A DNA stretch of 63,718 nucleotides, counting the filler, from Dugesia japonica (Eukaryota), in the NCBI GenBank assembly GCA_001938525.1. It is 6 parts of 6 records of this genome, joined end to end, with 100 filler letters (N's around TTAATTAATTAA, not from the genome) between each part and the next. Parts side by side here need not be neighbours in the genome. Positions count along the whole stretch, not along the records: positions 21,157 to 34,202 come from MQRL01622987.1; 5 more parts are not named here. One strand, written 5' to 3'. The notes beneath the pieces were generated by a model. That model did no database searches and was not told the DNA's origin. It was given only the letters and a program-made list of their open reading frames with translations. The position numbers and the translations under genes are program-made. Shown one piece after another: positions 21,157-34,202 of this stretch. The first letter of the stretch is position 1. The number at the start of each line of letters is the position of its first letter.

Positions 21157-21235
21157 TTTAAATAATTTATTTAATTTAATTTAATTAAATTTAATTATAT
21201 TAAAAAGATTTCTCCCAATTGAAATGAAAAGCTTT

Positions 21236-21432
21236 AAATTTCCAACCAAAATCTTACTTTTAAATTTCCCTCCAAAAAGATTTTTTTGAATTTCCCGCCA
21301 AAAAGATTTTTTTTAAAATTTCCCTACAAAAAGATTTTTTTTAAAATTTCCCTCCAAAACGATTTTTTTTTGAATTTCCTGACAAAAAAGAATTTAATTT
21401 CTCGCCAAAAATTTTTTGAATTTCTTGCCAAA
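21236..21432. repeat. ~24-26 bp minisatellite (aatttcccNccaaaaagattttttt)
   Basis: About eight degenerate tandem units. Confidence 0.8.
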
Positions 21433-21929
21433 AAATAACGATTAAAAAAAAATTTCATCCTAAAAAAAAATGATCCGATCAAAAAAATGATCAGATCAAA
21501 AATCAATAATTATCGATTTAAAAAACGCAGTTCAACGTAATGTGTTTTCGAGACCCCGGGGGGGGGTCCCGCTCGATAACTGCTTTAAAAAAAGTGTTGC
21601 AGTGCGCTAGTATCCCCCTACTCATGATATTCCAGAAGAAGACAATTGTCGACAATTTGAATATCTATAAAACAACAATTTAATTTCATCTAAGCTATTA
21701 CTTTATTTTAATAAAATCTCAAATGCGATTAATGGTTAAGTCAACAATTATTTACGCAGTAATTTTAATTATATATAGTTTTAGTTTAATAATTGAGAAA
21801 ATAATAAATATTACTTTTTATTGTAAAACTTTGTTTAAATATATTCAGTTTTGAAGTTTTTGAATTTTATTAAATAAATATTATGGAAGAATCTTGTGTC
21901 CTAACTATCTAAAATAATATGTATTGACC

Positions 21930-22370
21930 TGTTAGTCAGTGAGTTGAATATCTAATAGTCGTCCATTTCGTTCGTTCGTTTTTTCTTTCTATCTCTTCTT
22001 GCATACTTTCTCGATAACTATATCAATATTTTTCCACTTTTCGGCTACCAGAGGTTATTTCATCAACTCATTTCTTGGCAAATGGCTCCAAAACTGCTCT
22101 GTTAGTAGAGCCTTCTTGTTTGGATAAAACTTACTAGAATTAACTTTATCTGTTTCTATATACGATCTTCTTTCATCTTTGAGTCCATTTCTCTGACACT
22201 TTTCTCACTTTATCTTTTCTTTTATTGGACAATCATTCCCTGTATGACTTATTTTATGTCGTGACCAGCAGTCTGATCATTCTCTTCTTCTACTATGTTT
22301 TTTTGGTTTGTATTGTACCCATTTCCCTGTTTCCTGGTGGGCCCATGCTCCTCATCTTCACCTCAATGCT
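21930..22370 (-). mobile_element. LTR-retrotransposon gag remnant
   Basis: Minus-strand CWSRHKISHTGNDCP is a decayed CCHC zinc knuckle in purine-rich coding-like sequence. Confidence 0.5.
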
Positions 22371-23052
22371 AGTATATTTTGTTAAATTTAGATTTAAATA
22401 AATTCTCTTTCAATATATTGAACACAAACAGAATTTTTCTACAACCTCAATGACCAACAATTTGGAATACAACATCAGTTCTCAATTTTATTTTACATAA
22501 TCTAGTACATTGTATAGATAATTATATTGATAATGTTTCTACCTATTTCCAAATAAAACGTTTTTATTTACTTTACAAGTTATTATAAAAATTAGTACTA
22601 TTTATGCCAACATTTAATAGATTTAAAATTTTACATAACATAAATTAAATAAAACATTTAATAAGTTTTCGTAATTTCCTACAACACGAAACTTATCTCC
22701 GCGCTCTACGACACTACTATATTCGATTTCAATAGAATGATTGTATTTATTTGAAGCTGCATAAAATTTATTCAACAAATATAGCAGAAATTCATTTAAT
22801 TTAAATTATTTAATTAGAATTTTATTTTACTATTTTATAAATAATTAAGAATAATTTAAAAAGCATTAGTTTCAGTAATTTAAATACCGAAAATATTAAC
22901 TAAAAATAATTCTTACAATTTTAAATTTGCTTGTTATTAATGATTGAAAAATAATTTTAGAATGATTAATTAGTAAATTCAATTTAAATTTTAATAATTT
23001 TTTTATAGTTATAGTTTAATTGATCATAAATTATTTATTAATAATTAAGACC

Positions 23053-26000
23053 ATGTTTCTAAAAAAACTATTATTTTATTTTTTGTGGTTTTATTGTAAA
23101 GCTTCATGTAATAATTTTTTTAAAATGATATTAATTTTATGTTAAACCATCTAGATATAATTCCAGACAAAGACTATTTGTATTATTATAGTTCAGGTGA
23201 TAATGTTATTCAGTCATCTTTTGGTGATCGAATTGAAGTTAATATTTCTGATAATAATTTTAATGTAAAAGATGCATTATTTTTAAAAATCAAACCAAAT
23301 GCAGATTTGCATGGGAAAATATTACTTTGTAAACTGTATGATGGTAATACATTAGAAGAGACTAAAGAATATTTATTAATTGGTAAGAAAATTTTTGTTT
23401 AATTTATTCATTTAGGATTATTAATAATAATCTTTAAACAATTAGTTATTGTAAATCATTTTGTTCATTAAATAATTTTAGTAATTTATATCCATTAGTT
23501 TCCTTAATTTGATAAGATAATTTTAGTTAAACAGCGTGCTTATATTGCGTTATTTAAAGTGATAAATTACTAATCTACTTGCTTGTGATATTAATTTAAA
23601 TAAGGTTAAAGAACATTAATACATTATTGTGAATTATTAACATTTAATCCTTTACAAAAGAAATTATCAAAAAACTTTTGTTGGCATTTTTAATAAATTA
23701 TCTACTGATTTTCCTCATTAAAAAGAGTAACTGTAAAGATATTATTAATTAGTTTAATTAGTGTATGTGTGCGTATTATTTTGTGTCTATCCTAAATCAT
23801 GATTGGTTGCAATACGAATGCAATGCAAGTTAAACAAAGCATTTACGTGATTTTTATTTGTTGTATTAAATTGGTCAGATTGCGTCACATGAAATTTGCA
23901 TATTTATCACTTTGTGAAAGAAATGTGTCATGCTAAAAGAATGATATTATCAGCGGAAGAAGAATATTTAGACAATCTCGGAAGTTAAGCAGCTTTAAGC
24001 CTCTTTAGTACTTAAAACGTGATAATAGTCGACTGAGCCTGGTTAGTGTTTGGTTAGAGATAACCTTACATATTTCCATAGCAAAAAGGAGTCCACCACC
24101 TCGTATTTGACTGTTCGATTGTTCCAGTGTTTTCGGTTATATCCTTTCAAATTCTCTGAGAATTATTATCTGCCTGTGAATAGTTTTCATCATTAGATTG
24201 TCAAGTGGATACTCTAAATCAGCTAACAGATTCTAAATTCAAAACACCATCACGTATTGACCAAAATAAAAGTCCTTGTAGTCGGTTTCTGGAAATCCGC
24301 GCTTTTTGAAAACTAAAAACCGCGGTTTCGGTTTTTAATAACTTTTGTTGACAGTGTTTGATATTTGAATGGAGAAGGAACTAGAAAATTTGGAATATGT
24401 ATATGTAGTTTTGATTCAATTACAAATAGAATTATTGCTAGAAACATGTTAATAGCTTTTTATAATCGTGTTTAGCCCCCATTTGCTCCAAAACTCTGCT
24501 TTAGTGTCCGGAATTTAGTATCGAGGTTTAGAGTAAATGCATTGGATTGGCTAGTTGACATAATTGGCTAGGAAACAATTTGGTAAGAAAATAATTGCGG
24601 TTTTTAACATATAAAAGTAAAAGTAAAAATCTCGGAAAAAATAAAAACATTTTATTCAAAATATGAACCATTACAATCAATACATTTCTCCCAACGAGAA
24701 ATAAGTTTATTTATGCCAATAGAAAAGAAATCCACTTTCCCGGATTCAACGAACTCGAGGAAGGCATTTTAACATCGTTGTCGTTATGGAAGACTTTCTC
24801 TTGAAGAAAAGTGGAGAGATGATAAAAAAATGATAGTCAAATGGTGACAGGTCCGGGGAGAGAGTTTTGCGACGTGTGGACGGGCATTGTCGTGAAGAAT
24901 AATGGGATATTTTCTGTTAACTAATGCAGGTCACATAAATTTCAATTAGTAGTGCAATTCATTACTCTGCCTTCATAGTTTCACCTTGATTAAAAAAGTT
25001 GTAATTAACCAAACCGTCACCATTGTCTTCTTTTGACGCCATTTTGGCTTTGAAAAATGATATAGTGCTTTGCCTGTATCCAATTTTTGCGATGCTTGCT
25101 TTCTATTGTCGTATAGAGTCCATTTTTCGTTGCAAGTCACAATGCAATCAAGAAATGGATTGGTTTTATTTCTAAACAGATTCGCCAAGCAGATCTCGTA
25201 CCGGCGGTTTTCTGAAAATCGTTCAATTCATGCAAAACCCATTTATCGAGCTTCCGTACTTTTCCAAGAGGATGGAGGTGGTATAAAGCTGTTACCAAAC
25301 CTACGCTTAAATTCCCGAGTTGTTGCGCGTGGACTTGTTTTGATCATTACCTTCAAATCATCTTTTCTACACCCTGATGGACGTCCTCAACCTTCTCAAT
25401 AATTAAAAACCACCTTCAAGGCTGTCATCTTTACTCCTGAATATTTTAAGCCAAAATTGCACTGTTCTTTCTTTTTCAGTTTCATTGATGAATGAGTTTT
25501 TGACTTTCTGAGTCGTCTCTGCTGCTTGAGATCCCAGTTTAAATTCATATATGAATATTGCTCGTTTTTGATATTTATCCAACATCTTTTCCAAAAATAA
25601 TATTTCACAATAAAATAATTATAAAGATAAAATATTACTTGTATAATGTAGAATTGAATATTCGCTTCAAAATGAGATACAGATTAATATATTAAAACAA
25701 ATATTTCTTTTAAAGTGATATTATATAAAACCGCAATTACTTTCTTACCAACGTAATAGAATAAAATTCTTCAATTATTATAGAAAATGTTGTGAAGTTG
25801 CAATTTAATATGGCGTTAAAAAATTTGAAGTTAAACAATATTTCTCAAACATTTGACCATTGTGATTCTTTATGTTTTGATTTTTGGTAGAAATCCGAAT
25901 TTTCGACAACATTATTCTTCAGGGTTTTACAACTTGCCTTATTTAAATTATTCGAGAAATCAAAATGATTTTGGAACTTATTTTATTTTATTGGATTTTA

Positions 26001-29000
26001 ATTGGATAATTATTATAAATTACATTGATTTTTGGTTTATCTTTTTTAATTATTGTTTCCTCATGTTTCCTCCAGTGAAGTGTACAAATGTAGTCCGTTC
26101 CAATGTAAGCGAACCAAGGAGATTTATATGATCGCGAGTCAAATGGTCTTATGAAACCCCATGCCGAAATTAATGTAAAATTTTATTTCGGTAAACTGCA
26201 ATGTGACCTCGTTGAAACAAAGTGTGCAACATCGACCCGTTTTAAGATGTTTGCATCTGGATGCAGTTTCAGCCATTATGTATTGACACGAAAGATGGTG
26301 AACTATGCTTGTGCAGTTTGAAGTAAGAGGAAACTCTGATGGAGAACCGCCTCTGTTCTGACGTGCAAATTGATCGTCGGACATGAGTATAAAGGTGAAA
26401 GATTAATCGAACCATCTAGTAGCTGGTTCCCTTTGAAGGTTTCCTCAGGATAGCTGAAATTTGTTAGTTTAGTTTTACCTGGTAAGTATTGAGGACGAAA
26501 TGTTCTCAAATTATTCTCAAACTTTAAATGGGTTTGATGTGAGTCTTTCTTTATTGAAGATGTGCAAAGAATACAAATGTCTTGTTCATTATTTCTGGTA
26601 AGCAGAACTGGTGATGTGAGATTAACCAAACATATGGTATAGGTCCCACGCTACAGTTACTATTTCAATGTAGTCTTTCCAATGTTATCTGATGTTGTTT
26701 TGGTGAATTTCTATGCTGAAAAATTCATTTCCTTTCTTTAATTTTAGTTCTGCATGTTTCTATTGTATATGTTTCTTTGCATATGGTAAATGTTATTTTG
26801 TGAGTAATATTTGGTATATTGCAAATATTTATATAATTACAAATACATTTGCCACCACAAAAAAAGTTGTCTTGATTTCTGTAATTGGATCCCCGAAAGT
26901 GTTTGCGTTTCAAATATTATTTTTGGATTTTGCTTGAGTTTATATAGTTTATTATATTTTGCATGATTTGGCTACATTTCTCATTAATAAATAAATTTAA
27001 TTTACTTTACAATTGCAATTATTGCGAGAATAATTATTGGACGTAACAATTGATCGTTTTTCAGAAGTCATTTAAAATAAAAGTTTCGATCAAAATTTGT
27101 TTTTTTTTATTTTTGATAATAATTCTTTATTTCGACTTTATATTTATTTCGCCAGGAATTGACTTTTGAATTAAATCAATTCCTGGCGAAGGCAAAGTCT
27201 AAATTTAGAATTATTATCAAAAACCAAAAAAAAACAAATTTTGATCGAAATTTTTATTTTAAATTTAATTACTGTCTTTATTTTTTGTTTGATTTTATTA
27301 AATTTTATTTTCGAAGATAATTTATATTTTGATATAAATATATTTTTGATATCATTTTGATATCAACTTGACAGAAACAAATCTTATTACTTCACTTCAG
27401 TTCTAATTTTTCATCTTTAATTACACCAATTATCTGCTTCCTGATTGTAGTATTACTACCCCAGTGTTCTACATGTCCACTGTTAAATGGTTTCGTATAT
27501 TTATTTTGGATTAAAGTTTCCAGAAAATGAAATCTGAAAGACAATTGAATTCTTTAAATCTGAATTTAATGCTATTATTAATACTTACTATACACTTAAT
27601 TTTCTATAAAATATACAACAATATTTTGGGAATTATTCATAAATTTATAAGTAAGATTTTGTACTGAGAAGTAATCTAATGTTAATTTCCGCTGGAGGGA
27701 ATCCTGATATCTGCCAGTGAAAAATCTATTATTATTATCTATCGGGAAAATAAACTTACAATATGGAAAATAAATATACAACAGAGAAAATAAAATTAAA
27801 ATAAATAATAATTTAAATAGTTGATGATTGCTTAAATTCAAATGTTAAATTTTAATATTACCTGGAGAGCAACCAGATTCTAATGTTAATATTACTTTGG
27901 GAAAATTCAAATATTGATATTCATTGAGGAGTATTATAATATTTCTCTATGAGAGAACAAAATGCACTCATCAGTCATTTAACTGCGTACTCTTTTTGTT
28001 CGCAATTTTTTGTGAAAGAATATTTTTTATTTTTCATTTAACTTACTGTTTGCATATTTTATAGATTTTTAATTATGATATGCTTGGTCAGAATTAAATT
28101 TGCTTCGAATAATATATAGCATGGAAAAAATTACAATAATCGCAGCAAAATTCTCATTATAATAAATATTTTCATGGTTTTTAAGGAAAAAAAATATTTT
28201 CGTCAATTTAAACAAGAAATTAATTTAACAAAAAAATCCATAAAATCATTAAACTTCATCTTATTTAAACAAAAATTCACGAATTTCACTTATTTTAAAA
28301 GATAATTAAATTCTCCATAAATGATGTTGTTGACATCGACACAAAACACACATCAATGCATAAAATATAAACAATCAGATCTTCGACAGTCAATCATCAA
28401 GTAATTCTCAGTGTGTCCATATCTAAAGTAATCAACAAACAATTTAGTTATTGCAATTGACTTGAATAGATATTTTGATCATAATTTTGATCTGAACATT
28501 TTGATCTAAAAATCGATAATTCGATATGAACATCTTATAATTTTGATCCGAACATTTTATAATTTTAATTTGAATGCTTTTGTACATATTTATCTGAATT
28601 ACTTTATTTTTATATTTTTAAATGGTAAATGATTTAGAAATGAAAAAATAAGTGTAGTTTGTATTTCATTTGAAAAAACAAAATTTCTAAAAACTACTCA
28701 AGTGATTAAATCATTTCAAGAAATAAAACAAATAAATTTTTTTAAAGTAAAAAAATAAATATAAATCGAAATTCCTAGAAAAATAATTAAACATAGAAAA
28801 TCTCTTTGGAAAAATTTAATTGCAAAATAAATAAATAATAAATGTATCTTGTTTTACTAATTTATTTGGTATACATGAAATCAGTATAAATACTGATAAT
28901 TTTTTAGTTGTATTCAGACGTCATAATTATTGAACACTCCAATCGCTCAGAGTGGCAGTAGATCATTTAATTTAAAATTGTGCTTATAAGGTCTTAGTGT

Positions 29001-32000
29001 ACATTTTTTATATTCTATGATACACCAAAAATAAACTGTTATTTAAAGGTTATTATTGATTTATTTATATAGGAAAACAAATACACGATATTACCATATT
29101 TATACGTTTTTGATTAAATATATCAGATTTATAACACGGTATCGACATATAACAAAAGCAAAGATCATACAAAGATCAAAATCTATCATTTTATTTAATT
29201 CGATAGTTTTAAATTACGAACCATGCAATAACTTTGTTTAGTAGAAATACCCAAAAATGTAATTATTACCTAACATTAGATTAATGATGACATCAACACA
29301 TCGACTACCTAATAAACTATATATAAAATTAAACTCGTTTCTATATATTTCCAAAACCATATACGTAATCTGCTAACCTTAATTTGATTACCTTGCAAGG
29401 GAGATTTAAAATTGTGTTTAACTTTCACTTAAAAGATTCCACGAATTTTAATTCCAACTCAATAGTTATATCAAAACTGCNNNNNNNNNNNNNNNNNNNN
29501 NNNNNNNNNNNNNNNNNNNNNNNNNNNNNNNNNNNNNNNNNNNNNNNNNNNNNNGTAATATGATAATTGTTTTTAAATAAATAAATATATCATGCATATT
29601 TAACTTTGATATTGTACTAATAAATTAAAAATATACAAAAGTTTAAAATATTTTAAATTGTCAATATTTGTCTAATCTATGTTTTATGTAACAAATATTT
29701 ATACCAATCCTATATTTTCCANNNNNNNNNNNNNNNNNNNNNNNNNNNNNNNNNNNNNNNNNNNNNNNNNNNNNNNNNNNNNNNNNNNNNNNNNNNNNNN
29801 NNNNNNNNNNNNNNNNNNNNNNNNNNNNNTTATTTATCAAATATTCTTTTTGAAATTTAAGTTTTTTTATTTAGTTTTTATAATAATTAAAGGTAAAATA
29901 ATGAGATATGATATAAAACTGAAATTCGTTTCTCTCAAGTTGTAAAAAAATAAATTTTTAAACAAAGGCTATCAAAATTAAATGAAATAAAAATCTCTCT
30001 TATAATCTAAAAACTAAAATCAAACAAAAAATGAATAAAGTAATTAACTAATCTTTTATTAATGAAATATTTACTCAAATCATGTAAATTATATAAGATA
30101 TAAATCTACATTCAATTATTCATCTTAAAACTTACTCAAATAGAGCAATCTCAGTGAAATTATTTAAATTAAAAATTGTATTTATAAATAAATAAAATTT
30201 AAAAATTTACTCGATGAACTACTTTTTATTTTTAATTTTTATTTATTGTCAGGAAATGTAAAATTGAAATATTCTCCAATTCATGATAAATATTACGTTA
30301 AGAATTTCAAATATGAATTGGATGTATTTTATTTGGATACAAATACAAATTTGAAATATAAGTCAAAATGTAAATTGAAAGCGGTACAAAAGGATTATGA
30401 TTTTGATAATAAATTTATACTTCCCGAAAATTTAAAAGCTGGAACGTATACGATTACGTGTTATTATGAGCTTTCAACATATTCTGAAAAATTTGAGATT
30501 AATATATTTGGTAATTTATAAAACTTACATATATAAATTTTTTTTCATATTTAATAATATTTCTATTTAAAAGCAAAATAACATTGGTTTAGGTTCATTA
30601 GAATAAGATAAACAAAATTAATTTGATTAGCATGAATTTATATTATTTTATATTATATTATAAAAGCAGATTTGAATTTTTAGTATTTTAAGGCGGAATA
30701 TATTGAAATCAGAATTTTTAAATATTTAAATTTGTATCATAAAAAAAATTATAAAATAAATAAATTATCATTATCATTATTTATAAAAATAAATAAATTT
30801 GTACTAAAATTTTTATNNNNNNNNNNNNNNNNNNNNNNNNNNNNNNNNNNNNNNNNNNNNNNNNNNNNNNNNNNNNNNNNNNNNNNNNNNNNNNNNNNNN
30901 NNNNNNNNNNNNNNNNNNNNNNNNNNNNNNNNNNNNNNNNNNNNNNNNNNNNNNNNNNNNNNNNNNNNNNNNNNNNNNNNNNNNNNNNNNNNNNNNNNNN
31001 NNNNNNNNNNNNNNNNNNNNNNNNNNNNNNNTTACAAAATGCTGATATTTGATATTTTCCGTTATGAATATGAATTTTTAAATTTGTTTGGAAAAATCAA
31101 TTTTATATGTATATTTTTGTTTTGTGAATAAATCTTTTATGAAAATCAGTTTTGAAATTAATGTTCCGATGAGTACTTCAAACTCATCTAACAATACTAT
31201 TGTATTGTTACTACTTTTATGTATTCACTGAATCAGGACTGGTAATTATTATAGCTTGAGGCCACATTGTGTATTTCGAGACAAATAAAGGCCAACATTA
31301 AACATATTCACTTTAAAATTCGAAAAATTTATACATTGTATCACTATAACAGGCCTGGCCAACACGCGGTCCGTCATGTTAAATTGTGCTGCCCGCCGTA
31401 AATTTTTTATGAAACTATAATTTATTTGTAAAAAACTTTTAGTACATGAAAATTTATGTGTTTCTTTGATATAATGCGCAAATTTTAATAGATGATTTTA
31501 ATTCGATGACTTATTGCGAGCTGATTCTGAGTGCGAATAGTGAGAAAGCATCATGTTTTTTTCTTAATTCATTTCAACTATGTTCTGCAGCACGATTGTA
31601 TTAATTTTGATTTATCACATTTTTTGGCATGTTGTTATGCTGACTGAGGTATCTTATTTTCTTTCAAGAAAAGTATAAAAAATTCTTCATGTTAATATAT
31701 GTTTTCTAATGTAAATAAATTAAAAAATATCTATTGATATAATTTTTTCTTTTAAAAATAATAAAATAAATTTTGATTTTGAATATTTATTACTTTTTTT
31801 AAAAAAAACATTTTTATTTAAAGTGTGGCCAGTTATAATGTTACAAAATGAAAAATGGCCACTAAAGCTATTTAAAAAGATGTAAAAGTTTTATTTAAAA
31901 ACTTAACTCTACTAAATTTATATAATTTATAATACCATACGAAGTTTATTTGATAATAAGGTTAATTTAAGTGACATGCGGCCGCTATTTTCAAATCCAT

Positions 32001-34049
32001 GCACTTAGTGATAAATTAATGAATTGTGGTTTTATTTTTTTAAATAAATTATGTGTCTTAAAAAGGAAAAAAAGAAGTAAAGTGTATTATTTTATTTAGA
32101 TTATTATCATGAGTCTAACATGTGATTGATTTACAGGATATTTTTTGCTTTATACCAACCACATTCGTGATTGTTTCACAACACAATTTTAAATTTACAC
32201 AAATCAAACTCATTATTATTACTAAAATGGTTTTTAAATTCAATTTTAAAATAATTAGTGTAAGTTTCATTTTCTATATTTTTTAATGATCAGTAAACGC
32301 ATTCAAATTCTTCTTACCAAAACGATTTTATTAAAATCAAATATTAGTATTGTTAGATAAGTTTGAAGTAATCATCGGATAATTAATGTCAAAACTCGTT
32401 TCAATAAAAGATTTATTCACAAAACAAAACTATATCCATCACTATTTTTTTATTCAAAAAAGATACCCAGTTTACCCTGAAATCTATTATACTCATTTAC
32501 CACCTGTAGATCCGTATCTATTTACAGACTCCGATCTCATTTCTTTCTCAAACGACTCTACAAATAATATTTGAAAACCTTCTCTCTTTCTATCTAAGAC
32601 ATCCCAACTTGCATTATCTCGATATTTTGTCGATCTTCCTTTTGATATACAGCTCCAACTGTTCCTATTAATCACTTTAGCAAAAGTCAACATTGTATCA
32701 ACTCTCTTTATTCCGTACATTTTCCAAAAACCACAGTGTTTCCTTTATACACTTTGCAAACATTAATTTTTCCTCATCCTTTTTATTTCTAACACATTGT
32801 ACTAAGAGCTTTACCGGAAGCTTTTTATTTTTTTGTCAATAAATTTTCCATAGATTCTTATACATTCCTAATATAAACATCGATATATTGACCTTGTCTT
32901 CTGTAATCCATAATTTTTCTATATCTTTCACTATATTATTCCTTACTGAACTGCCTAAACAAACCTGGAGACCCTCAGTATTACCCACTGTTTCCACATA
33001 TTTTTTCAAGAAATCTTTGTCGATCATACAAGTCATCAACCTTTCTTGTTCTTTCTGGTTGGTATAGTTCTAATGACTTTCACATCTCGGTTTCATACAA
33101 ATACGTCAAAGAATCTATATTGACCAATGCCGNNNNNNNNNNNNNNNNNNNNNNNNNNNNNNNNNNNNNNNNNNNNNNNNNNNNNNNNNNNNNNNNNNNN
33201 NNNNNNNNNNNNNNGAAACATCTGCAGTATTCATCCGAATAATTAAGATCAAATATTAAAAAATAAAATATGATACTACAAATTACTAAATTAAAATTAT
33301 TAAAACTTACGAAAGTATAATAATACAAATATATAAAATGTAATAATACCGATTTACAAAAAACTACCAAAAATTACAATATTAAAACAACATACAATAA
33401 ATAATGCATTTATTAAAATTACATTTAAATAACATTCATTTAAGTTCAAGTTAACATAAAACTTTTTTTCATTTTAATATATCCTTACAAACGTCAAGAT
33501 AAATTATTATTTATTTTTAGAAAGTAATTATTGCCTAAAATGCATTCAATATATTTTTTTAAAGTTCTAGGTGTACACAATGTCATAATATACAGTAATT
33601 ATTTCATTTATGTTTAACTCTAAATCTATTGACTTAAATTTNNNNNNNNNNNNNNNNNNNNNNNNNNNNNNNNNNNNNNATTTTTTCAACTTATTTTATT
33701 ATTAAATTACATCAATAACTTATTCTTTTTGATCATCCCAACTATTTATCTATTATTATAACTATTATAATTTGAGTAAATGTGTAATTAATTTTAGATA
33801 TTTATTTGAAATTTGATATTACTCCTAATACAAATGAAATCAAATATCTTACACAACCGGAAATTTCATGTACTATTAATTCTCCAGTTAATTTGCCCTA
33901 TAGTCTTAAAGCTAACTCATCCTTTGTTAAATATCTATCATTATATTCACTAACATTCGATCAGCTATTTCCTATATATAATACAACTCAATGTGTCACG
34001 TGTTCAATTGATTCACAAATTTACTCGGAAAAATGTTATTTATTGACAG
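23053..34049 (+). CDS. Unannotated secreted/cell-surface protein with tandem Ig-like modules. Exons 23053-23107 (signal peptide), 23155-23382, 30253-30510, 33798-34049; 3' end cut by the contig edge
   Basis: All junctions are GT-AG and phase 1, and the joined frame is open. N-terminus MFLKKLLFYFLWFYCKAS. The three modules (228, 258, 252 nt) share an early Pro and a C-terminal C-x(6-8)-EK/ET-x-Y/F-x-L/I-x-G pattern, with N-glycosylation sequons NIS, NSS and NTT. Confidence 0.65.
23972..24066 (+). pseudogene. 5S rRNA-derived fragments (two partial, decayed copies of the internal region)
   Basis: aatctcggaagttaagcag...ttagtactt and gagcctggttagtgtttggttagagataacc resemble the 5S box A to box C segment GATC-CGAAGTTAAGCA...GCCTGGTTAGTACTTGGATGGGAGACC. 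Confidence 0.6.
24580..25758 (-). mobile_element. Near full-length degenerate mariner (Hsmar1/cecropia-like TIRs)
   Basis: TIRs ttggtaagaaaataattgcggtttt (24580) and aaaaccgcaattactttcttaccaacgtaa-TA (to 25758). Transposase pieces RAIFIYEFKLG, FLDCIVTCNEKWTLYDNRK, KKTMVTVW, HDNARPH, SPDLSPFDYH. Confidence 0.9.
26085..26650 (+). pseudogene. Degenerate 28S (LSU) rRNA fragment
   Basis: Conserved LSU strings gatggtgaactatgc, ctgacgtgcaaattgatcgtc, gaaagattaatcgaaccatctagtagctggttcc, tttcctcaggatagctg, ttctcaaactttaaatggg and ggtaagcagaactgg, with many substitutions and no flanking rDNA. Confidence 0.9.
27003..27264. mobile_element. Palindromic long-TIR element; ~95-bp arm hairpin at 27070-27264
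   Basis: ttcgccaggaattga (27148-27162) pairs with tcaattcctggcgaa (27176-27190), and the pairing extends to 27070/27264. Single-arm copies at ~43430-43560 and ~54805-54897. Confidence 0.75.
31350..31870. mobile_element. Probable non-autonomous hAT (Charlie-like) element
   Basis: Left end caggcctggccaacacgcggtccg...gcccgcc and tggcc subterminal motifs near 31825-31860. No right TIR was identified. Confidence 0.4.
32400..33132 (-). mobile_element. Heavily decayed LTR-retrotransposon pol (RNaseH end/integrase) fragment
   Basis: Coding-like purine bias on the minus strand; NIDSLT resembles NADxLSR. Multiple stops. Confidence 0.4.
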
Positions 34050-34202
34050 GTAATTTTTAATAAAAATGGAATGAATGACGGATTGTTAATATTTTATAAA
34101 ATGAAACAAATTCAATTAACTTCCAGTTTTTATTTTATAAATGTTATTTTTACAAATATAAAAATATTTATTTTTCGCTACAAATATCATTAATCTTACA
34201 AT

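What the first reader, a model, noticed from the sequence alone, without database searches (positions are those of the whole stretch)
23053..34049. Hidden modular surface-protein gene: signal peptide plus one Ig-like domain per symmetric phase 1-1 exon
Seen: three 'orphan' ORFs (23139, 30246, 33806) each trim to a GT-AG exon of 228, 258 or 252 nt, all phase 1-1. They splice in frame behind a 55-nt signal-peptide exon and all lie within one contig. The modules are very divergent but share architecture: DLHGKILLC, GTYTITC and ISC-x43-C (plus a second Cys pair), ending YLLIG, INIFG and YLLTG. Established: one domain per phase 1-1 exon is the classic Ig-superfamily layout and allows any exon to be skipped or shuffled without a frameshift. 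Inference: a lineage-specific, fast-evolving Ig-like receptor or antigen gene with combinatorial splicing potential (immune, allorecognition or host-interface role). Its 3-7 kb TE-filled introns contrast with the ~42-bp introns of the housekeeping genes here.
Basis: partly seen in the sequence, partly recalled or inferred. Interest (0 to 1): 0.75.

Follow-up and report, generated by a model that had tools for sequence, protein, structure and literature searches.

The report
Unconfirmed orphan secreted modular protein gene
The signal-peptide exon and three same-phase exons of about 80 codons each exist as described and are unlikely to be chance, so this is probably the front part of an unannotated secreted modular protein gene. 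No RNA read shows the exons joined, they lie on three different assembly contigs, and only one module has fold evidence, a moderate-confidence generic Ig-like beta-sandwich.

Summary
The coordinates, GT-AG sites, lengths (55, 228, 258, 252 nt), phase 1 throughout and the quoted motifs are all correct. The pattern is more than chance. Three or more such exons on one strand occurred in 0.25% of composition-matched simulations. A signal-peptide-like phase-1 ATG exon behind a short intron occurred in 0.34%. Codon-position bias fits the claimed frame.

The claim "one contig" is wrong. The piece is six contigs, and exons 1-2, 3 and 4 lie on three of them. All five gaps fall in the proposed introns.

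RNA was inconclusive. Three RNA-seq runs gave almost no depth and no junction reads, with about one fragment on exon 3.

No homologue was found by Pfam, three word searches, one exhaustive HMMER search (exon 4), a metagenome scan or PDB sequences.

Verdict: a plausible lineage-restricted secreted modular gene. Membership of the Ig superfamily, combinatorial splicing and an immune role are not shown.

The parts
23053..23107 (+). Proposed exon 1: an ATG plus a 18-codon signal-peptide-like sequence (MFLKKLLFYFLWFYCKAS), ending in phase 1. An alternative phase-1 donor (GTAAAG) lies at 23096.
   Evidence: Sequence reading. A crude test for a signal-peptide exon gives P = 0.0034 in simulations and also lists the alternative donor.
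23108..23154 (+). Proposed intron 1, 47 nt, GTAAT...CTAG.
   Evidence: Not tested with reads, because it lies outside the stretch that was laid.
23155..23382 (+). Proposed exon 2, module 1 (76 codons, phase 1-1, donor G|GTAAG). It has one Cys.
   Evidence: There are weak, sub-threshold leads to V-set Ig: PDB TCR V-alpha E 0.04, and language-model scores of 0.82-0.87 for several V-set/ig clusters. Pfam finds nothing. Not folded.
23383..30252 (+). Proposed intron 2, about 6.9 kb as scaffolded. It contains assembly gaps 29481-29554 and 29722-29829.
24580..25751 (-). Decayed mariner-type transposon inside intron 2, with 25-nt terminal inverted repeats (96% complementary) and a broken transposase reading frame.
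   Evidence: Inverted repeat I16. Pfam Transposase_1, E 3.7e-05. Ends read.
26113..26650 (+). Decayed fragment of eukaryotic 28S (LSU) rRNA inside intron 2. It accounts for several of the listed ORFs there.
   Evidence: Rfam RF02543, 161.5 + 83.7 bits, model positions 665-1170, with many broken pairs.
30253..30510 (+). Proposed exon 3, module 2 (86 codons, phase 1-1, donor G|GTAAT). It has two Cys residues 29 apart and no Met.
30511..33797 (+). Proposed intron 3, about 3.3 kb as scaffolded. It contains gaps 30817-31031, 33133-33214 and 33642-33679.
31110..32434 (.). Non-coding element with 90-nt terminal inverted repeats (89% complementary). It is very high-copy.
   Evidence: Inverted repeat I1. 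Depth in run X9 is about 1300-2400 on the bins holding the two arms (200-420 on inner bins, one inner bin at 0), against about 3-4 on the exons.
33798..34049 (+). Proposed exon 4, module 3 (84 codons, phase 1-1, donor G|GTAAT). It has four Cys residues and no Met.
   Evidence: AF2 pLDDT is 42, so there is no usable model. No homologue among 1.84 billion representatives. A 198-nt X9 contig covers 33800-33997 with 5 differences.
34050..34202 (+). Start of a further intron (GTAATT...). It is cut by the end of the piece, so the gene's 3' part, including any transmembrane or GPI exon, is not in hand.

Best explanation
This is probably the 5' portion of a real, unannotated, lineage-restricted gene for a secreted or surface protein in a very AT-rich eukaryote, probably an animal. 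A 55-nt exon encodes a signal peptide. After a 47-nt intron come at least three exons of about 80 codons, each a self-contained, Cys-bearing, beta-rich module flanked by phase-1 introns. The long introns have filled with transposon and rRNA debris. After signal-peptide cleavage the product would be a string of small beta-sandwich modules outside the cell, the usual build of adhesion or binding proteins. Shown here: the exon anatomy, its statistical improbability, coding-type codon bias, and a moderately confident Ig-like sandwich model for one module. Inferred: that the exons are spliced together, that all modules fold alike, and that the protein is extracellular. The gene continues beyond the piece.
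For: - Exact GT-AG phase-1 exon model.
- These are the only three such exons with G|GTAA donors on the + strand outside transposons.
- P = 0.0025 for three or more by chance.
- P = 0.0034 for the signal-peptide exon plus short intron.
- GC1 exceeds GC3, and G is enriched at codon position 1 in the claimed frame.
- Exons 3 and 4 have no Met and no signal exon of their own within 250 nt, so they make sense only as internal exons.
- Stop codons follow each donor within 8-17 nt and precede each acceptor within 10-61 nt.
- Exon 3 folds alone as an all-beta domain with pLDDT 74-82 over residues 20-85. Every top structural match is an Ig-like sandwich.
- Weak Pfam hits of exon 3 are all beta-sandwich families.
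- Cys counts are even in exon 3 (two) and exon 4 (four).
Against: - No junction-spanning read was seen, and RNA depth was essentially nil in three RNA-seq runs. These were sub-sampled at 6-25%, and exons 1-2 were not in the laid stretch.
- The exons lie on three different contigs joined only by scaffolding.
- No homologue of any module was found anywhere.
- The modules are not significantly similar to each other.
- Exon 4 does not give a confident fold.
- In run X9, a different strain or a paralogue, exon 4 differs at 2.5% of positions against 1.9% in an intronic contig. That gives no sign of purifying selection, though the numbers are small.
- Each exon is also followed closely by an in-frame stop if it is left unspliced.
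Confidence: 0.45

Rival explanations
1. Only exons 1-2 form a live gene: a small secreted protein of about 100 residues, either ending at the in-frame stop just after 23382 (…LLIGKKIFV*) or spliced to unknown exons. Exons 3 and 4 would then be relics of duplicated modules (pseudo-exons), or would belong to other family copies that scaffolding of short contigs has brought together.
For: - Exons 3 and 4 sit on contigs of 987 and 523 nt, flanked by gaps and high-copy repeats.
- There are no junction reads.
- Exon 4 gives no fold and no homologue, and is no more conserved than intron sequence in X9.
- The signal exon and 47-nt intron are the best-supported part of the model statistically.
Against: - All three modules have the same strand, the same phase, nearly the same length and the same G|GTAA donor. 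Decay would be expected to close a 250-nt frame quickly in DNA with 20% G+C.
- Exon 3 still folds well.
Confidence: 0.25
2. One reading: a true immunoglobulin-superfamily receptor or antigen gene, with one Ig domain per exon, that is fast-evolving and makes many isoforms by exon skipping for immune, allorecognition or host-interface use.
For: - The phase 1-1 layout of one module per exon.
- Exon 2 has weak TCR V-alpha and V-set leads.
Against: - No Pfam Ig model matches.
- No Trp occurs in any module, and there is no canonical B-F Cys pair.
- At 76-86 residues the modules are short for V-set or I-set domains.
- Structural matches at the same Z include PKD, FN3, T9SS C-terminal and MG domains, so the fold is generic.
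- There are no data at all on isoforms, polymorphism beyond one contig, paralogues or function.
Confidence: 0.12
3. Chance: three open frames in AT-rich non-coding DNA that happen to be flanked by AG and GT in the same phase. No gene is present.
For: - Other stop-free runs of 225-345 nt occur in the piece in transposon and rRNA-derived DNA.
- There is no RNA support and no homologues.
- Hydrophobic F/L/I/Y-rich peptides that mimic signal peptides are common in translated AT-rich DNA.
Against: - The simulation probabilities are 0.0025 and 0.0034 for two separate features.
- Codon-position bias fits the frame.
- The amino-acid make-up is protein-like and hydrophilic, with alternating residues.
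- The exon 3 model is confident without any alignment.
Confidence: 0.13

Closest known systems
Immunoglobulin-superfamily cell-surface proteins (V/I/C2-set domains, for example CD4 domain 2)
   Different: - No Ig Pfam match.
- No Cys-Trp-Cys pin.
- The modules are 76-86 residues long.
- FN3, PKD, MG and T9SS C-terminal domains score equally.
Hydractinia Alr allorecognition genes (PMC9546547)
   Same: The Ig-like domains are mostly invisible to HMMER and lack the canonical Cys/Trp core. Each domain is encoded by a single exon behind a signal peptide. Some gene models there also lacked expression or splicing evidence.
   Different: Alr domains were shown to be V-set or I-set by HHpred and by high-confidence models of about 100-residue domains. 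They have a transmembrane segment and tail, many paralogues and genetic proof of function. None of these is available here.
Sponge aggregation factor genes (PMC5400394)
   Same: An extreme phase-1 intron bias (154 of 155 introns) with symmetrical exons in a lineage-specific, fast-diverging extracellular gene family. That paper proposes the layout aids exon shuffling and frame-safe alternative splicing.
   Different: Those modules are recognisable Calx-beta, VWA, VWD and Wreath domains and are often split over three exons. No such domains are detected here.
Class 1-1 mobile modules of metazoan extracellular proteins (Patthy's exon-shuffling rule, as cited in PMC5400394)
   Same: Symmetrical phase-1 module exons lie behind a signal-peptide exon that also ends in phase 1.
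   Different: The modules here match no known mobile module family, and duplication or shuffling cannot be shown because the modules are not demonstrably homologous.

Membership tests
Immunoglobulin superfamily (V-set, I-set, C2-set, ig) | Significant match to an Ig-family sequence profile | tested here: not met
   - Pfam scan of all three modules at E up to 10 gave no Ig family.
- PDB sequence search: exon 2 versus TCR V-alpha gave E 0.04-0.13, domain i-Evalue about 0.4, which is not significant.
- Language-model neighbours of exon 2 include V-set/ig clusters only at 0.82-0.87, below the tool's 0.9 lead threshold.
Immunoglobulin superfamily (V-set, I-set, C2-set, ig) | Greek-key beta-sandwich fold of two sheets | tested here: inconclusive
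- Exon 4: pLDDT 42, so no usable model.
Immunoglobulin superfamily (V-set, I-set, C2-set, ig) | Core 'pin': B-strand Cys, C-strand Trp and F-strand Cys, with Y-x-C in strand F | tested here: not met
   Reading of the translations:
- No Trp occurs in any module.
- Exon 2 has one Cys.
- Exon 3 has two Cys residues 29 apart, with 'GTYTITC'.
- Exon 4 has C24...C68 (43 residues between) plus C65/C79.
Absence of the pin does not exclude the fold, as the Alr domains show (PMC9546547).
Immunoglobulin superfamily (V-set, I-set, C2-set, ig) | One domain per exon flanked by phase-1 introns | tested here: met
   Exons of 228, 258 and 252 nt, all phase 1-1 with AG/GT boundaries. Splicing itself is not shown.
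Secreted or surface modular protein built of class 1-1 exons | N-terminal signal peptide | tested here: inconclusive
   MFLKKLLFYFLWFYCKAS has a basic N-terminal region, a nine-residue hydrophobic core and a small-residue site (C-K-A, then S). It passes a crude rule-based test that 0.34% of random upstream sequences pass. No SignalP-type predictor was available.
Secreted or surface modular protein built of class 1-1 exons | Exons joined in one mRNA | tested here: inconclusive
   Read laying on 28203-34202 with one contig run and three RNA-seq runs gave no joint at 30510/33798 and near-zero depth, with about one fragment on exon 3 in X11. Junctions 23107/23155 and 23382/30253 lay outside the stretch that could be laid.
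Secreted or surface modular protein built of class 1-1 exons | Modules related by duplication | tested here: not met
   BLASTP E values were 0.024, 0.048 and no alignment. Shuffle z-scores were 1.5-2.0 for two pairs and negative for exon 2 versus exon 4.

The most novel reading that the evidence does not exclude
The modules are sequence-cryptic Ig-superfamily domains of a lineage-specific receptor family, comparable to the Hydractinia Alr genes. Their symmetrical exons would be used for frame-safe exon skipping to diversify a recognition molecule in an AT-rich invertebrate.
Probability: 0.1. Interest if true: 0.6.

Novelty: new member of a known kind. Interest (0 to 1): 0.3.

Why it matters
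If it is real, this gene is one that annotation pipelines miss. It has short, orphan, AT-rich exons separated by kilobases of repeat-filled, gap-ridden intron. It would add a lineage-specific secreted beta-sandwich protein to this organism's surface or secretome repertoire. The layout itself, a signal exon plus phase 1-1 module exons, is textbook for animal extracellular proteins. The value is therefore mainly for annotation, and as a possible entry point to a hidden gene family. It is not a new principle.

Tried and rejected
- Pfam on the three modules gave nothing above cut-off.
- Word-index protein searches on each exon gave no candidates. These see only proteins of about 45-150 residues.
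- The exhaustive HMMER search with exon 4 gave 0 hits at E up to 0.001, and not even a self-hit. This genome's ORFs are therefore evidently not in that library, and the blank says little about paralogues.
- The metagenome locus scan with exon 3 gave no relatives.
- PDB sequence searches gave only chance-level rows. The exon 3 hit to MRT4 (E 1.6e-4) is read as a compositional match of Lys/Asp-rich stretches.
- A tblastn of the modules against the piece found no extra copies or pseudo-exons.
- No additional phase 1-1 exons of at least 99 nt with GTAA donors were found.
- Exons 3 and 4 have no signal exon of their own within 250 nt.
- Reads: the one read-laying run showed no junctions. Run X9, labelled as a guessed RNA run, covers intron as well as exon at equal depth. 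It is therefore probably DNA and cannot count as expression evidence.
- A read-supported link of 30750 to 31032 with 38 other letters (table 5c) probably comes from another repeat copy. It was not used to judge or fill the gap.
- The organism could not be named, because run labels are coded. 'Probably an animal' rests only on the mariner remnant, whose TIR resembles the Hsmar1/cecropia type from memory.
All work was exon by exon, by reference. No gap letters were filled or looked up.
Full report
**The piece and its gaps**

The usable piece is window 21157-34202. It is very AT-rich, with 8-38% G+C in 500-nt windows. It consists of six contigs separated by five runs of N: 21157-29480, 29555-29721, 29830-30816, 31032-33132, 33215-33641 and 33680-34202.

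The proposed exons 1-2, 3 and 4 therefore lie on three different contigs, two of them under 1 kb. No exon contains an N, and every gap falls in a proposed intron. Reading frame across gaps is therefore not at issue, but order, orientation and linkage depend on scaffolding. No overlap between gap flanks was found.

**The observation**

Reading the sequence and an independent script reproduce the model exactly.
- The ATG is at 23053.
- Exon 1 is 55 nt and encodes MFLKKLLFYFLWFYCKAS plus one base.
- The first donor GT is at 23108, followed by a 47-nt intron ending ...CTAG.
- Exon 2 is 23155-23382 (ends G|GTAAG).
- Exon 3 is 30253-30510 (CAG|G ... G|GTAAT).
- Exon 4 is 33798-34049 (TAG|A ... G|GTAAT).
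- All junctions are phase 1, and all quoted motifs are present.
- A second phase-1 donor (GTAAAG at 23096) could also end exon 1.

**Is it more than chance?**

- In 400 third-order Markov simulations of the piece, three or more phase 1-1 AG..GT open exons of at least 228 nt on one strand occurred in 0.25%. The mean was 0.36 per strand.
- On the + strand, the only phase 1-1 exons of at least 99 nt with GTAA donors outside transposon DNA are these three and their internal sub-variants.
- A signal-peptide-like ATG exon in phase 1, followed by a 35-80 nt GT..AG intron directly upstream of an acceptor, occurred in 0.34% of 5000 simulated upstream regions. It is absent upstream of exons 3 and 4.
- In the claimed frame, G+C falls from codon position 1 to position 3: 0.37/0.22/0.12, 0.28/0.20/0.20 and 0.29/0.35/0.16 for the three exons. 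G is enriched at position 1 and T at position 3. This is the usual coding signature in AT-rich genomes.
- Exons 3 and 4 contain no Met codon, so they can only be internal exons if they code at all.

I conclude that the pattern is real and unlikely to be accidental.

**Expression**

DNA runs of the coded 'organism A' hold the stretch, and several RNA-seq runs of that species exist.
- No joint at 30510/33798 was reported.
- RNA depth was essentially nil. The exception is about 280 bases, roughly one read pair, over exon 3 in X11, with the first mate on the minus strand.
- Most laid RNA reads were partial matches to AT-rich or repeat DNA.
- X9 has a 198-nt contig on 33800-33997 with 5 differences. 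It also covers intron at similar depth (320-nt contig at 28356-28675 with 6 differences), so it is probably DNA and is no evidence of expression.
- Exon 4 is not better conserved than intron in that comparison (2.5% against 1.9%). Of the three listed differences, two fall in one codon and change Glu to Asn, and one is synonymous.

**Relatives**

- Pfam finds nothing above cut-off. Exon 3 has weak hits to Y_Y_Y (E 0.007), Wzt_C and DUF4625, all beta-sandwich families.
- Word-index searches with each exon found no candidates.
- An exhaustive HMMER search with exon 4 against 1.84 billion representatives found nothing, not even itself. That library evidently lacks this genome's ORFs and cannot count paralogues.
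- A metagenome scan and PDB sequence searches gave nothing significant.
- Exon 2 residues 7-39 align weakly with the C'-C''-D-E region of TCR V-alpha chains (E 0.04-0.13).
- The language-model neighbours of exon 2 include several V-set/ig clusters at 0.82-0.87. Both of these results are below the level the tools call more than a lead.
- The three modules are not significantly similar to each other. Aligned from the donor, they share only a loose pattern: Cys, 7-8 residues, [E/S]E[K/T], then [Y/E][L/I]x[L/I]xG.

**Fold**

- Exon 3, folded alone without an alignment, gave mean pLDDT 68 and pTM 0.60. Residues 20-85 scored 74-82, with eight beta-strands and no helix.
- Foldseek against the PDB gave only E of about 0.1. 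All leading rows are Ig-like sandwiches: T9SS C-terminal domain, CD4 D2, complement MG domains and filamin.
- The ESM Atlas gave TM 0.55-0.61 to Por_Secre_tail, Big_1 and MG4 proteins.
- Exon 4 gave pLDDT 42, so no conclusion is possible.

**Introns**

Intron 2 is about 6.9 kb as scaffolded. It holds a decayed mariner with 25-nt TIRs at 24580 and 25751 and a Transposase_1 fragment. It also holds a decayed 28S rRNA fragment at 26113-26650. That fragment explains several ORFs there.

Intron 3 is about 3.3 kb. It holds an element with 90-nt TIRs at 31110-32434, whose depth in X9 is hundreds of times that of unique sequence. 'TE-filled introns' is thus confirmed.

**Interpretation**

The most economical reading is the 5' part of an unannotated, lineage-restricted gene for a secreted or surface protein made of small beta-sandwich modules. 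It has one module per phase-1 exon and continues beyond the end of the piece (confidence about 0.45).

The main rival (0.25) is that only exons 1-2 are live. Exons 3 and 4 would then be relic modules or parts of other copies brought together by scaffolding. Pure chance stands at about 0.13.

**Comparison with known systems**

The layout is the classic class 1-1 module arrangement of animal extracellular proteins. It recalls sponge aggregation factors, with 154 of 155 introns in phase 1 (PMC5400394). [quoted passage not shown]

Membership of the Ig superfamily fails on profile match and on the Cys-Trp-Cys pin, and is inconclusive on fold. The finding works like a modular extracellular protein but cannot be filed as an IgSF member.

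**Score**

Interest is modest (0.3). This is a plausible missed orphan gene of an ordinary architectural kind, and its expression is unproven.

Noticed in passing
window 26113-26650 (+): A decayed fragment of eukaryotic 28S (LSU) rRNA (Rfam RF02543, model positions about 665-1170, many broken pairs) is embedded in the proposed intron 2, a few hundred bases downstream of the mariner remnant. It looks like an rDNA-derived pseudogene piece far from an rDNA array.
   Followed up: partly
window 24580-25751 (-): A decayed mariner element of 1172 bp with 25-nt TIRs (TTGGTAAGAAAATAATTGCGGTTTT). From memory the TIR resembles the Hsmar1/cecropia subfamily. The transposase frame is broken, with a Pfam Transposase_1 hit on one ORF only.
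   Followed up: partly
window 31110-32434: A 1.3-kb non-coding element with 90-nt terminal inverted repeats (89% complementary). Its arms reach depths of about 1300-2400 in run X9 (200-420 on inner bins), against about 3-4 on the exons, so it is a very abundant repeat family in this genome.
   Followed up: no
window 21232-21434: A tandem array of about seven copies of a 26-28-nt unit (consensus near TTTTGAATTTCCCNCCAAAAAGATTTTT), upstream of the gene.
   Followed up: no
window 32493-33130 (-): A stretch of higher G+C (about 0.30) with strong negative GC skew (-0.4). It has two minus-strand ORFs (75 and 67 aa) without Pfam hits and zero depth in X9. It could be an unclassified transposon remnant or a nested minus-strand exon.
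   Followed up: no
window 21540-21640: A short G+C-rich island with a G9 run (…CCCCGGGGGGGGGTCCCGCTCG…) in otherwise AT-rich DNA. Its origin is unknown, and it matched no Rfam family and no tRNA.
   Followed up: partly
window 33800-33997: A 198-nt contig in run X9 matches exon 4 with 5 differences. Among those listed, G33860A and A33862C fall in one codon (Glu to Asn) and G33895A is synonymous. This is either strain polymorphism or a paralogous copy.
   Followed up: partly
window 30214-30252: Just upstream of exon 3, an out-of-frame ATG opens a short hydrophobic peptide (MNYFLFLIFIYCQEM*). It is not in phase with exon 3 and is probably a compositional accident. It shows how easily AT-rich DNA mimics signal peptides.
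   Followed up: yes
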